A stretch of 63,113 nucleotides of DNA, filler included, from Olpidium bornovanus S191 (lineage: Eukaryota; Fungi; Olpidiomycota): NCBI GenBank assembly GCA_017911155.1. It is 32 parts of 32 records of this genome, joined end to end, with 100 filler letters (N's around TTAATTAATTAA, not from the genome) between each part and the next. Parts side by side here need not be neighbours in the genome. Positions count along the whole stretch, not along the records: positions 4,958 to 7,869 come from JAEFCI010010266.1; 31 more parts are not named here. One strand, given 5' to 3'. The position numbers and the translations under genes are program-made. Shown piece by piece: positions 5,282 through 7,869 of this stretch. Below the pieces are notes generated by a model. That model made no database searches, had not been told where the DNA came from, and was given only the letters and a program-made list of their open reading frames with translations. The first letter of the stretch is position 1. Each line of letters opens with the position of its first letter.

Positions 5282-7869
5282 AAACGGGAAGAGCCGAGTG
5301 AGGAGACCACCACCAACATCGGAAGTCAAGCCTCAGACACCGAAAGTCCGGCGGAGGGCGAAATACTTGACATCAAGGTGAGGCGGATGCCGGGCGTCTT
5401 CCCCCATCTCCCCCGGTAAAGAAGTGCAGGCGATCACGGCGTTTACGACGATTTGCCGTTGTTTAGGGAGACGGGTCTCGATCCGTGCCGCCTGCATCGG
5501 ATCGGAATACTTATGCGGTACCTGGAACTGAGCAACGACGACAGACCGAGACCACGACCGGCGCTCTCCAAAACTTTGACCTGGAACAAAGTTCGTCCGA
5601 TGTTTACACTCGTCCGCCCCCTCTGGGGGATGCCGGGCAAATCGGCCGATTCAAATCAGCCGAATTCCTGCGCCGTCTGCACGAGGCCAAATCGTTGCAG
5701 GGAGCGGACGACGAAAGCAAGACCGAAGAAGGCGACGTATCGCAGAGGAATGACGAAGGCGAATCGCCGCAGCAAATCGATTTGCAACGAAACGAGCTGA
5801 GCCAACAGCATCCTGCCGAACCTTTATCAAGAATTTTTCATCAGGCGGCGGTTCGATCGCCCCATAATTCCTATGACGACTTCCTCCCCAAGGACGTTAC
5901 GGACCAAGAAACCCCCCCGTCGGTTGCCAGTGACTTTGGCGGCCAGGCCGCCACGTACAAGTCGAACGAGTTCCTACGGAAAATTCGTCACGCACAACGA
6001 AGCCTCGCGGAGCTGGACGACGCAGGGGCCGGAGCGGCGGGCGTGCCGGAAACCGCGGAAAACGCGACCGCGGGTTCCCGGGACACGGCAGCGGGCGAGT
6101 TGAGCAAAGTTCTCGTCCAATTCGAGGCTCGGGAAAAAGCAGCGGCCGCTTCCGGGGCCCCGGAAAGCGAAGGCCGAACGCTGGCCCGTTCCGATAACTA
6201 CGCGGCTCCGCCGAGCGACCGAAAGCCCAACGCGGACGAAATCGGCGTTCACCGCGGGACGGCCGGGGCCGAATCGAACGACCTCGCCCGTCAACTCCGT
6301 GAAAAGCAGGGGATAATCGGGAACACTGACTTTTCTGAGGCGCAGCGGCAACTGATCCGATGCGTGTTGAACGACATTTTTGCTCGACTTGACGAGGGCA
6401 ATATTGCGGTGCGCGAGGCAATAACAGATATTGTACAGCTTAGGTCGAATCAATTCCTGCAGCAAGCGGAAGACGAACGACCAGGTCCAGACCACCGCGC
6501 GCCGGCCGGAGCGCACCAGCAGATGATCCGTTACATTGCTAACGACATTCTCCATCAGCTCCGTGAACGCCTGCTGCTTGGCGAAGGCGTTGATGACGGC
6601 GCTGGTCGCGTCATGGAAATTGTGCGTCACCGGTCTAACGAATTTCTTCGGCAGCTAGCTGGCGACGAACCCGAGGTGGCACCAAATGCGGCTGAAGCTC
6701 GGCAAATAATGGCCGGTCGCATTGCTGATGACGTGATCAGCCGCGTTCAGCAAGCGCAGTCTCGCCTGCCGATCCCGGAAGCAGAAGTAAGAGAAATCGT
6801 GCGCTTCAGGTCAAACGAACACCTTAGACATGTGTACGATTGCGAGCAAAGAACCCTTCCTGAGGGCGCTCATCCTGAGAAGCAGCAACTGATTGAAGAC
6901 GTATCCAGTAATATCATACATTGCCTGAGACAGTCGCCTTGCGCAAGCCATGCTGAGCAAGAACGCGCAGTTGGCAGCATAGTCCGCCACAGGTCAAACG
7001 AATTGCTCAACTACCTGCAGAGCAAGCAGCCTGCTGCGCTTCCGGGACCTCAGCAACAAAGCGGCCCTTTCGCACCTGCCGGCGGCCTTGACCAACAACG
7101 TCGGGTCACATCTGCCAGGGGCTTTCCAGCATTGGATGCTCCTCATGCCACTGGAGAAAAGCAGGTGATCCGGTATTCCGTGAGCCGCGATGCCCAGCAA
7201 CAGTTAGTCCAATCTGTGGTAGACGACATATTGGTCGGAGTTGGGGATGAAAATTTGGGGACAGGTGTCTCAGACGACACGGTAAAGGATGTCGTGCGCT
7301 ACAGGTCAAACGAATTTCTGCGACAACTGCAAGGCGAAACACCGGGGATATCTTTTTCGGCGGCAGCGGAAGAGCACCGGCAGATGATCCGTTACATCTC
7401 GAACGATATTAACCTGCTACGCGAATCATCCCCTGGAGGAAACGCTCGCGATAAAGCCGAGGCCGTTATGGACATTATACGCTACAGGTCTAACGAGTTT
7501 CTTCGGGGCCTGTCCGATGCGGAACCTGAGACCGAGGTTGAGGAAACGCCTGATCCACAGCAGCAGATGATTCGCCATATTGCAGACGACGTTCTGCAAG
7601 CGCAAGCAAGCCAGAGTGTCACCGGAGAAGAGATCAACAGAATCGTACGCTGCCGGTCGAACGAATTCCTCCGCCGCGTGTGCGACCACGTGCCGAAGGT
7701 CCCTCCAGCAGAGGCAGCCGCCGAGGAACGGCAGATGGTCCAGCGCGTGTCCAACGATGTCCTGCGTTACCTCCAGCAACAGCCGCCAGGCACGAACACT
7801 GCCGAACAAGCCGAAGCGCTGGGGAGGATAATGCGCTACAGGTCAAACGAGTTCCTCAGCCTCCTCATG
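5282..7869 (+). CDS. Unknown protein with tandem ~60-aa helical 'RSNEFL' repeats (partial at both ends)
   Basis: Phase-0 exon 5282-5377 joins a long exon 5467-7869; a further upstream exon probably ends at 5168. [YHFLC]-[RK]-S-[NA]-[EQ]-[FHL]-L occurs at 5650, 5956, 6439, 6628, 6805, 6988, 7300, 7483, 7651 and 7837. The last eight are each preceded by a QQMIRxIxxD[IV]L-type helix. No family recognised. Confidence 0.85.

What the first reader, a model, noticed from the sequence alone, without database searches (positions are those of the whole stretch)
5467..7869. Unrecognised tandem-repeat protein with alternating 'RSNEFL' two-helix units
Seen: eight ordered repeats (motifs at 6439, 6628, 6805, 6988, 7300, 7483, 7651, 7837; spacing 63, 59, 61, 104, 61, 56, 62 aa) plus two isolated upstream copies (5650, 5956). 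Each unit is helix 1 (QQMIRxIxxD[IV]L), a variable linker, then helix 2 (I[VIM]R[YHFC]RSNEFLR). Helix 1 alternates between a DD-type (LNDIF, ADDVI, VDDIL, ADDVL) and an ND-type (ANDIL, SSNII, SNDIN, SNDVL), giving four ~120-aa higher-order repeats. Synonymous sites differ between copies while RSNE is retained, which points to selection on the protein. I recognise no repeat family with this signature. Inference: a new alpha-helical repeat or a multivalent docking scaffold, possibly lineage-specific (cytoskeletal, cyst-wall or host-interaction role).
Basis: partly seen in the sequence, partly recalled or inferred. Interest (0 to 1): 0.8.

Follow-up and report, generated by a model that had tools for sequence, protein, structure and literature searches.

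The report
Orphan giant helical-repeat protein of Olpidium
The window holds part of a very large, transcribed and spliced gene of the root-parasitic zoosporic fungus Olpidium bornovanus. Its protein is a string of at least 20 copies of a previously undescribed two-helix 'RSNEFL' unit that has no relative in any public database, so the repeat is real and new but its function is still a guess.

Summary
The piece is a whole 2,912-bp contig of the Olpidium bornovanus assembly. Positions 5467-7869 are the third exon of a gene annotated only as a hypothetical protein. All ten motifs lie at the stated places, and the eight full units are two-helix modules.

The contig's last 121 nt equal the first 121 nt of another contig. 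RNA contigs run across that junction, so the gene continues with 12 more units, 20 in all, and encodes at least about 1,850 aa. Units group into five super-repeats of four unit types (about 240 aa).

Synonymous sites between super-repeats are saturated, with dN/dS about 0.2-0.3, so the protein motif is under selection. Both introns are spliced out in three RNA runs.

Pfam, PDB sequences, an exhaustive HMM search of 1.84 billion proteins and a metagenome scan found no relative. AlphaFold models two units as a generic antiparallel four-helix bundle (pLDDT 76, pTM 0.60) with no specific structural relative.

Best reading: a lineage-specific, non-enzymatic rod or multivalent scaffold made of about 10 four-helix bundles on flexible acidic linkers. 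The function is inferred, not shown.

The parts
4958..5030 (+). 3' end of an upstream intron (poly-G run, CTAAC branch-point-like site at 5010, AG at 5029-5030). The annotated protein wrongly translates this stretch.
   Evidence: Contigs of all four runs leave the window sequence at 5028 and share one different upstream sequence (table 7). CTAAC lies 17 nt before the 3' end. The intron reading is an inference from these two results.
5031..5168 (+). Coding exon (46 aa, acidic and low-complexity)
   Evidence: Covered by RNA contigs and joined to 5282. It matches P0001.
5169..5281 (+). Intron, 113 nt, GT..AG
   Evidence: Skipped in contigs of X1, X2 and X3 (table 5). Boundaries were read.
5282..5377 (+). 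Coding exon (32 aa)
5378..5466 (+). Intron, 89 nt, GT..AG
   Evidence: Skipped in contigs of X2 and X3. Boundaries were read.
5467..7869 (+). Large coding exon, 801 codons, open to the contig edge. It continues in contig JAEFCI010004781.1 (locus L001).
5650..5679 (+). Isolated helix-2-type motif FKSAEFLRRL with no helix 1, in the acidic pre-repeat region
5956..5985 (+). Isolated helix-2-type motif YKSNEFLRKI
6292..7029 (+). Super-repeat 1 (units 1-4, types 1-4; P0001 aa 365-610)
   Evidence: The five super-repeats align in register at 29-42% identity. Permutation test.
6343..6471 (+). Unit 1 (QRQLIRCVLNDIF ... IVQLRSNQFL)
6517..6660 (+). Unit 2 (QQMIRYIANDIL ... IVRHRSNEFL)
6700..6837 (+). Unit 3 (RQIMAGRIADDVI ... 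IVRFRSNEHL)
   Evidence: I set the helix-1 start by hand from the alignment, because the automatic start was wrong for this unit.
6880..7020 (+). Unit 4 (KQQLIEDVSSNII ... IVRHRSNELL)
7153..7869 (+). Super-repeat 2 (units 5-8; P0001 aa 652-890). It was modelled as eight helices.
7195..7332 (+). Unit 5 (QQQLVQSVVDDIL ... VVRYRSNEFL)
7378..7515 (+). Unit 6 (RQMIRYISNDIN ... IIRYRSNEFL). Units 5 and 6 together (7177-7533) are modelled as a four-helix bundle.
7558..7683 (+). Unit 7 (QQQMIRHIADDVL ... IVRCRSNEFL)
7726..7869 (+). Unit 8 (ERQMVQRVSNDVL ... IMRYRSNEFL), cut by the contig edge
7749..7869 (+). 121 nt identical to the first 121 nt of the next contig (L001). This is an assembly break inside the gene.
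   Evidence: The RNA contigs are colinear with window plus L001.

Best explanation
The window encodes the N-terminal half of a single very large gene assigned to Olpidium bornovanus. The protein is at least about 1,850 aa, and the RNA contigs are 8-10 kb long.

After an acidic, low-complexity head of about 340 aa come 20 copies of a roughly 60-aa unit. Each unit is an amphipathic helix 1 (QQQMIRYISNDILxxL), a short loop that often contains PPG, helix 2 (xxIVRYRSNEFLRQL) and a Pro/Glu/Ala-rich linker. The units are arranged as five super-repeats of four unit types.

Shown: the gene is real, spliced and transcribed. The repeat is old and under purifying selection at the protein level. No relative exists in current databases.

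Inferred: neighbouring units pack pairwise into antiparallel four-helix bundles. That would make the protein a flexible chain of about 10 bundles, comparable in architecture to talin, vinculin or spectrin-type rods. The protein has no recognisable catalytic domain, so it most likely acts as a non-enzymatic structural linker or multivalent scaffold. Each unit would then present the same conserved outer patch (R, Y and N of the RYRSNEFL helix, and QQQ at the start of helix 1) 20 times, either to a repeated or polymeric partner or to many copies of one partner. The R and S of the motif and the D of helix 1 lie on or beside the hydrophobic arcs, and probably form a polar lock inside the bundle.
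For: Identity and reality:
- 100% match to the NCBI Olpidium bornovanus hypothetical protein BJ554DRAFT_2698, on a 2,912-bp contig.
- Both introns are removed in RNA-run contigs at over 99% identity.
- The frame is open for 801 codons, while the other frames are full of stops.

Continuation of the gene:
- There is an exact 121-nt overlap with L001.
- L001 frame 2 is open for 2.8 kb.
- Four internal similarity marks of the RNA contigs fall at exactly the L001 coordinates predicted for a window-plus-L001 join.

Repeat architecture:
- 20 units align.
- Five 4-unit super-repeats align in register.
- Period 4 has p < 0.0002 and period 2 has p = 0.008.

Selection:
- dN is 0.48-0.77, dS is 1.6 to over 3, and dN/dS is 0.17-0.33.
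- Motif codons vary synonymously between copies.

Fold:
- The two-unit AlphaFold model has four helices of 21-25 residues, pLDDT 76 and pTM 0.60.
- Its best structural neighbours are all antiparallel four-helix bundles: FAT domains, the dynamin and MxB stalks, vinculin, alpha-catenin and TLNRD1.
- Conserved hydrophobic residues span an arc of about 180 degrees on both helices, as expected for a helix with two neighbours. N (90% conserved), R and Y face the opposite side.

No enzyme or known domain was found. The protein is acidic and hydrophilic, with pI about 5 and GRAVY -0.7.
Against: - The bundle model rests on a pseudo-alignment of 10 paralogous repeats. The 4-unit model was poor (pLDDT 61, pTM 0.37), so packing between bundles is not supported and the pairing register (1+2 versus 2+3) was not tested.
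- All structural matches are non-significant or generic: Foldseek E is at least 0.07, and VIA Z is at most 10, below the level the tool itself calls informative for helical bundles.
- No partner, localisation or phenotype is known.
- Both ends of the protein are missing. RNA contigs extend at least 0.77 kb upstream and about 3.3 kb beyond L001, so a signal peptide or a catalytic or anchoring domain could still exist.
- All 7 differences between strains are non-synonymous. That fits fast evolution outside the motifs and says nothing about a conserved role.
- Assignment to Olpidium rests on composition binning of a non-axenic sample (PMC7865070).
Confidence: 0.45

Rival explanations
1. The protein is a largely disordered chain in which each helix is an independent docking peptide. 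Helix 1 would act like an AKAP-type amphipathic helix that recruits RIIa/DPY-30-domain proteins, for example in the zoospore flagellar apparatus. The RSNEFL helix would be a second short helical motif.
For: Helix 1 has the paired-hydrophobic pattern (MIxxIAxxILxxL) typical of AKAP helices; the consensus is recalled from memory and is a lead only. Helix-2-type motifs occur three times on their own without helix 1, at P0001 aa 151 and 253 and in the P0002 tail as EFKRDEFVR. Linkers are Pro- and acid-rich. The organism makes flagellated zoospores (PMC7865070).
Against: The strict AKAP pattern matches helix 1 in only about 5 of the 20 units, and the count lies within the shuffle range. The strongest conservation is in helix 2, not helix 1. 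The two-unit model folds as a compact bundle with pTM 0.60, which would bury the helix-1 face. No RIIa or DPY-30 Pfam signal appears in any unit.
Confidence: 0.12
2. It is a molecular ruler or filament-binding protein. Its four-unit super-repeat would match the periodicity of a cytoskeletal lattice such as the striated rhizoplast or the axoneme of the zoospore, in the way nebulin and titin super-repeats match their filaments.
For: The ordered 4-type super-repeat has been kept over a time long enough to saturate synonymous sites. The protein is very large and elongated by design. Olpidium zoospores have a striated rhizoplast (references listed in PMC3247622). X4 probably comes from the assembly's own strain, because it shows 0 differences from the window. 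It also leaves the window at 5028 with the same upstream sequence as the spliced RNA runs, which suggests it is RNA. The assembly's DNA and RNA both came from zoospores (PMC7865070).
Against: Block duplication of a 4-unit segment produces the same pattern without any functional periodicity. There are no localisation data. No similarity to known filament-binding repeats was found. X4's library type is not on record.
Confidence: 0.12
3. It is a secreted or host-facing protein of the parasite, such as a wall or matrix component or a host-interaction factor, in which tandem helical modules bind a host or wall ligand.
For: Olpidium is an obligate root endoparasite. Three RNA runs labelled with another, much-sequenced organism, probably the host, contain the spliced transcript. 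The gene is an orphan, and all 7 strain differences change an amino acid. Language-model neighbours, at a weak score of at most 0.65, are bacterial surface or virulence tandem helical modules.
Against: The N-terminus is not recovered, so no signal peptide is known. The protein is very large, acidic, Cys-poor (about 1%) and has no hydrophobic segment, which fits a cytosolic protein better. The Atlas scores are far below the level that tool calls meaningful.
Confidence: 0.1
4. The contig does not belong to Olpidium but to another eukaryote in the non-axenic zoospore wash. The repeat would then be lineage-specific to that organism.
For: The genome was binned from a metagenome by tetranucleotide composition (PMC7865070). 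An orphan gene cannot be placed by phylogeny. Soil metagenomes hold parts of it.
Against: It survived three rounds of conservative binning. The introns are short (81-113 nt) GT..AG introns with CTRAY sites, as is usual in fungi. The same transcript appears, with 0.2-0.3% differences, in RNA runs from another study, as expected for a root-associated parasite. This rival concerns the source organism, not the nature of the protein.
Confidence: 0.08

Closest known systems
Tandem helical-bundle rod proteins (talin rod, vinculin/alpha-catenin, FAT domain of FAK/Pyk2, TLNRD1)
   Same: Two RSNEFL units are modelled as an antiparallel up-down four-helix bundle of about 120 aa. These proteins are the top Foldseek matches and are among the VIA matches. 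The overall design is many bundles in series.
   Different: No sequence similarity (7-15% identity). E-values are at least 0.07, TM is about 0.44 and rmsd is about 6 A. Here each bundle is built from two copies of one sequence repeat and the bundles are joined by long Pro/acid linkers. No LD-motif or actin-binding features were identified.
Dynamin/MxB/BDLP stalk four-helix bundles
   Same: These are the best VIA-align matches (Z 9-10, rmsd 2.8-3.2 A over 112-119 residues). They are elongated antiparallel bundles with helices of similar length.
   Different: In dynamins the stalk helices come from distant parts of the chain and flank a GTPase. There is no GTPase here, and Z is below the level the tool regards as specific for helical bundles.
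Nebulin/titin-type super-repeat rulers
   Same: Simple repeats with one short conserved motif (SDxxYK in nebulin, recalled from memory; RSNEFL here) are organised into ordered super-repeats of several unit types in a giant protein.
   Different: This is an analogy of organisation only. The unit length (60 versus 35 aa), the super-repeat (4 versus 7 units) and the predicted fold all differ. No filament partner is known, and block duplication alone can explain the pattern.
De novo designed helical repeat proteins (DHR series; PDB 5cwb, 8cwy, 8cws)
   Same: These are the only PDB sequences reached by the two-unit profile (E 5e-5 to 3e-3). They are idealised helix-loop-helix repeats of similar composition.
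   Different: They are artificial proteins, so homology is impossible. The match reflects amphipathic-helix composition.
AKAP amphipathic helices and RIIa/DPY-30 docking domains
   Same: Helix 1 has the paired-hydrophobic periodicity of AKAP helices. A unit is a helix-turn-helix like an RIIa domain. Both resemblances are from memory.
   Different: No Pfam RIIa or DPY-30 match was found in any unit. The AKAP pattern fits only a quarter of the units and is not enriched over shuffles.

Membership tests
Any Pfam repeat or domain family (HEAT, ARM, TPR, spectrin, ankyrin and others) | A match to the family HMM at or near its gathering score | tested here: not met
   The whole exon, the pre-repeat region, P0002 and each of the 20 units were scanned at E up to 10. 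The best hit was 14 bits against cut-offs of 21-28, and no family recurred between units.
RIIa / DPY-30 docking domain | A match to PF02197 or PF05186, which describe a helix-turn-helix of about 40 aa | tested here: not met
   Neither family was listed for any of the 20 units at E up to 10.
RIIa / DPY-30 docking domain | Dimerises into an X-type four-helix bundle that binds an amphipathic helix | not testable with these tools
   No multimer prediction or binding assay was available.
AKAP-type RII-binding helix | Consensus [AVLISE]xx[AVLIF][AVLI]xx[AVLI][AVLIF]xx[AVLISE], recalled from memory | tested here: inconclusive
   There were 5 matches in P0001 and 4 in P0002, against shuffle means of 1.4 and 1.8 and shuffle maxima of 9 and 10. 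Only about 5 of the 20 helix-1 segments match.
FAT / vinculin / talin-type four-helix bundle | Significant structural superposition on a solved bundle of the family | tested here: inconclusive
   Foldseek gave E 0.07-0.3, probability up to 0.97, TM 0.40-0.48 and rmsd about 6 A. VIA Z was 7.7-8.0, within the range the tool calls common for helical bundles.
FAT / vinculin / talin-type four-helix bundle | Sequence relationship to the family | tested here: not met
   No PDB sequence hit was found with the protein or with the profile, apart from designed proteins.
Spectrin repeat | A three-helix unit of about 106 aa | tested here: not met
   Units have two helices per roughly 60 aa, or four per roughly 120 aa, and there is no Pfam match.
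New family: RSNEFL two-helix repeat (defined here) | A unit of about 60 aa with helix 1 QQxMIRxIxNDIL, a loop, and helix 2 IVRYRSNEFLRxL | tested here: met
   There are 20 units in the two contig pieces. The unit HMM scores 555 bits on P0001 and 815 bits on P0002, but both were used to build the profile. It finds no other protein below E 1e-4 among 1.84 billion.

The most novel reading that the evidence does not exclude
The RSNEFL repeat is a new fold-level building block in which two 60-aa sequence repeats make one four-helix bundle. It would belong to a lineage-restricted giant ruler or linker of the Olpidium zoospore cytoskeleton, for example the striated rhizoplast that ties the kinetosome to the nucleus. 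Its conserved 4-unit super-repeat would be matched to the lattice period of that structure. That would give a first molecular handle on a zoospore organelle in the zoosporic lineage closest to the non-flagellated terrestrial fungi.
Probability: 0.1. Interest if true: 0.6.

Novelty: new variant of a known kind. Interest (0 to 1): 0.33.

Why it matters
[quoted passage not shown] Almost nothing is known about its cell biology at the molecular level.

A giant protein that is expressed, under selection and without any homologue shows that this lineage has its own structural parts. It also supplies a clean new repeat family for structural study and corrects the public annotation. Two 'partial hypothetical proteins' are pieces of one gene, and the first 24 residues of one of them come from an intron.

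Without localisation or a partner, the practical significance is modest. Orphan repeat proteins are common in poorly sampled eukaryotes.

Tried and rejected
- Pfam on the exon, the flanks and every unit: nothing.
- PDB sequence search with the protein: nothing. With the two-unit profile: only de novo designed repeat proteins.
- Rfam: nothing.
- Word-indexed search of 5.8 billion proteins: only the gene's own two pieces.
- Exhaustive unit-HMM search of 1.84 billion representatives: the gene's own pieces plus one insect protein (Lycorma delicatula) at E 2e-4. It matches helix 1 only, and I judged it a chance or composition match.
- JGI metagenome contigs scanned for RYRSNEFL: 58 pattern hits, none a relative.
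- Search for the next contig's protein with the C-terminal 97 aa of P0002: nothing.
- ESM Atlas features: best score 0.65, uninformative.
- Four-unit AlphaFold model: low confidence, and the Foldseek results are meaningless.
- Literature search for the motif strings and the locus tag: nothing.
- I considered and rejected a recent DNA tandem repeat or an assembly artefact, because TRF is negative and dS is saturated.
- I considered and rejected coding on the opposite strand. The minus-strand ORFs of up to 218 aa carry no repeat and have no support.
- I did not build a joined sequence of the two contig pieces. All analyses used the pieces separately.
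Full report
**What the piece is.** Positions 4958-7869 are an entire 2,912-bp contig of the Olpidium bornovanus assembly GCA_017911155.1. The translated exon is 100% identical to the NCBI entry 'MAG: hypothetical protein BJ554DRAFT_2698, partial' (P0001, 890 aa). That genome was assembled with MEGAHIT from non-axenic zoospores washed off cucumber roots, and was binned by tetranucleotide composition (PMC7865070). 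Attribution to Olpidium is therefore by binning, not by phylogeny.

**Gene structure and transcription.**
- The frame beginning at 5467 is open for 801 codons up to the contig edge. The other five frames hold 13-34 stops.
- Contigs from three public RNA runs of another study (X1-X3, more than 99% identical) cover the gene with two GT..AG introns removed, at 5169-5281 (113 nt) and 5378-5466 (89 nt).
- All four runs leave the window sequence at 5028 and share one different upstream sequence. The window has a CTAAC site 17 nt upstream of the AG at 5029-5030. I infer that 4958-5030, including the poly-G run, is the tail of a further intron, and that the first 24 residues of the annotated protein are intron-derived.
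- One RNA contig carries 765 nt upstream of this point.

**The gene continues on another contig.**
- The only other hit among 5.8 billion proteins, P0002 ('BJ554DRAFT_7165, partial', 1,000 aa), begins with the last 13 residues of P0001.
- Its contig (L001, JAEFCI010004781.1) starts with the exact last 121 nt of the window. It is open in the same frame for 2.8 kb, followed by an 81-nt GT..AG intron and more exon running off its end.
- The RNA contigs extend 5.8-6.3 kb past 7869. The four places where the aligner found internal similarity to the window fall at exactly the L001 coordinates predicted for a window-plus-L001 join (513, 932, 1752 and 2122), with the same mismatch counts.
- The two 'partial proteins' are therefore one gene of at least about 1,850 aa. 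RNA contigs go on for about 3.3 kb beyond L001. I did not build a joined sequence.

**The repeat.**
- P0002 adds 12 more units, one of which has a decayed motif (RENAEECV). That makes 20 units, plus three stand-alone helix-2-type motifs: two in the acidic head and one in the tail.
- Consensus: QQQMIRYVSNDILxxL, then a loop of 8-14 residues that often contains PPG, then xxIVRYRSNEFLRQL, then a Pro/Glu/Ala-rich linker of about 15 residues. S, N and L of the motif are at least 90% conserved.
- SNEFL occurs six times in the exon, against at most three occurrences of any 5-mer in 2,000 shuffles.

**Higher order.** Unit identity by lag 1 to 8 is 0.27, 0.31, 0.28, 0.35, 0.29, 0.33, 0.27, 0.35. Units of the same class modulo 4 are the most alike (0.34 against 0.28 at odd lags; permutation p < 0.0002). 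Five four-unit blocks of about 240 aa align in register at 29-42% identity with type-specific features, and longer linkers sit at the block borders. The window holds blocks 1 and 2.

**Selection and age.**
- Between blocks, dN is 0.48-0.77 and dS is 1.6 to over 3, which is saturated and twice incalculable. The nominal dN/dS is 0.17-0.33.
- Motif codons differ synonymously in nearly every copy, and TRF finds no DNA-level array.
- The seven differences between the assembly and the RNA-run strain are all non-synonymous. They lie in the head, the linkers and a loop, plus one R>K change in helix 2, and none touches the core motif. Seven out of seven is not significant on its own (about 0.12 under neutrality).

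**No known relative.** The searches were:
- Pfam on the exon, the flanks, P0002 and each unit.
- PDB sequences, and Rfam.
- An exhaustive profile search of 1.84 billion representative proteins.
- A back-translated RYRSNEFL scan of JGI metagenome contigs.
- The ESM Atlas.
- A literature search for the motif strings.

All gave nothing beyond the gene itself. The single extra profile hit (E 2e-4) is an uncharacterised, low-complexity protein of the lanternfly Lycorma delicatula that matches helix 1 only, and I treat it as chance. The two-unit profile reaches only de novo designed helical repeat proteins in the PDB (E 5e-5), which is a composition effect.

**Structure.**
- With the five blocks as a pseudo-alignment, AlphaFold gives eight helices but no confident tertiary structure (pLDDT 61, pTM 0.37).
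- With ten two-unit segments, units 5 and 6 (window 7177-7533) give four helices of 21-25 residues with pLDDT 76 and pTM 0.60.
- Every structural neighbour is an antiparallel four-helix bundle. Foldseek finds FAT domains of FAK and Pyk2 (E 0.07-0.3, TM about 0.44). VIA-align finds the dynamin, BDLP and MxB stalks (Z 9-10, rmsd about 3 A), and vinculin tail, alpha-catenin and TLNRD1 (Z about 8). AlphaFold DB finds unnamed bundles (TM up to 0.66). None is significant or specific, so the fold is generic.
- A helical-wheel count on the alignment shows conserved hydrophobic residues spread over about 180 degrees on both helices, as expected for a helix with two neighbours. The motif's R and S lie within that arc, E and the helix-1 D lie at its edge, and N (90%), the first R and Y face the opposite, presumably exposed, side.

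**Interpretation.**
- Shown: a real, spliced, transcribed, very large orphan gene whose product is dominated by an old, selected, two-helix repeat in a 4 x 5 arrangement.
- Inferred with moderate support: pairs of units form four-helix bundles, giving a chain of about 10 bundles on flexible acidic linkers.
- Inferred with weak support: a non-enzymatic linker or multivalent scaffold that presents one conserved surface patch 20 times.
- Expression in zoospores is probable but not proven. Run X4 matches the window with 0 differences, so it probably comes from the assembly's own strain. It also leaves the window at 5028 with the same upstream sequence as the spliced RNA runs, and the assembly's material came only from zoospores. 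However, the library type of X4 is not on record.
- The rivals cannot be excluded because both ends of the protein are missing. They are independent docking helices of the AKAP type, a ruler for a periodic zoospore structure, a host-facing protein, and a contaminant origin. The strict AKAP pattern fits only about a quarter of the units.

**Verdict.** The reading 'new alpha-helical repeat, lineage-specific' holds. The higher-order period is four units, not two. Function remains open. This is a new sequence family with a familiar architecture, and it is of moderate interest.

Noticed in passing
window 4958-5030: The contig starts with a 17-G run and GGGGTGT repeats. No sequencing run follows the window sequence upstream of 5028. 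With a CTAAC site at 5010 and an AG at 5029-5030, this looks like the tail of an intron, so the first 24 residues of the public protein model (SSTVLTHTHNQ...) are probably not real.
   Followed up: partly
window 7749-7869 and L001 1-121: Two NCBI 'partial hypothetical proteins' (BJ554DRAFT_2698 and BJ554DRAFT_7165) are adjacent pieces of one gene split by an assembly break. One of the strain differences (7826 G>A) lies inside the 121-nt overlap, so a polymorphic bubble may have caused the break.
   Followed up: partly
window 5611, 5751, 6158, 6191, 6677, 6755, 7826: All seven differences between the assembly and the RNA-run strain change an amino acid (R>C, N>K, A>G, S>F, V>A, A>E, R>K) and none is synonymous. 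The number is too small to test, but it hints at fast evolution of the head and linkers.
   Followed up: partly
window 7162-7191 (P0001 aa 655-664): The long linker between super-repeats 1 and 2 holds a remnant of a helix 1 (EKQVIRYSVS) just before the real helix 1 of unit 5, as if a half unit had decayed.
   Followed up: no
L001 about 875-892 (P0002 aa 265-270): Unit 12 has lost the motif (RENAEECV in place of RYRSNEFL) while keeping helix 1. It is the only clearly degenerate unit in the array.
   Followed up: no
L001 2792-2872 and 2873-3163: After the repeats comes a disordered tail of about 225 aa, an 81-nt GT..AG intron, and a further exon that contains another helix-2-like motif (LVEFKRDEFVRTI) and runs off the contig. 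RNA contigs continue for about 3.3 kb more, and I could not read that sequence.
   Followed up: partly
alignment A4 (window 7177-7533 and paralogous segments): The two-unit profile hits only de novo designed helical repeat or cage proteins in the PDB (8cwy, 8cws, 5cwb; E 5e-5 to 3e-3). The natural repeat is compositionally close to idealised designed helix-loop-helix repeats.
   Followed up: no
runs X5, X8, X9, X11: Several soil metagenome runs hold 5-14% of the window's sampled 31-mers, so this organism or a very close relative is detectable in soil DNA surveys.
   Followed up: no
window 5974-6630, minus strand: There is a 218-aa antisense ORF, and another of 174 aa, opposite the coding exon. 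They have no repeat, no homology evidence and no separate transcript evidence, so they are probably a by-product of GC-rich coding sequence.
   Followed up: no
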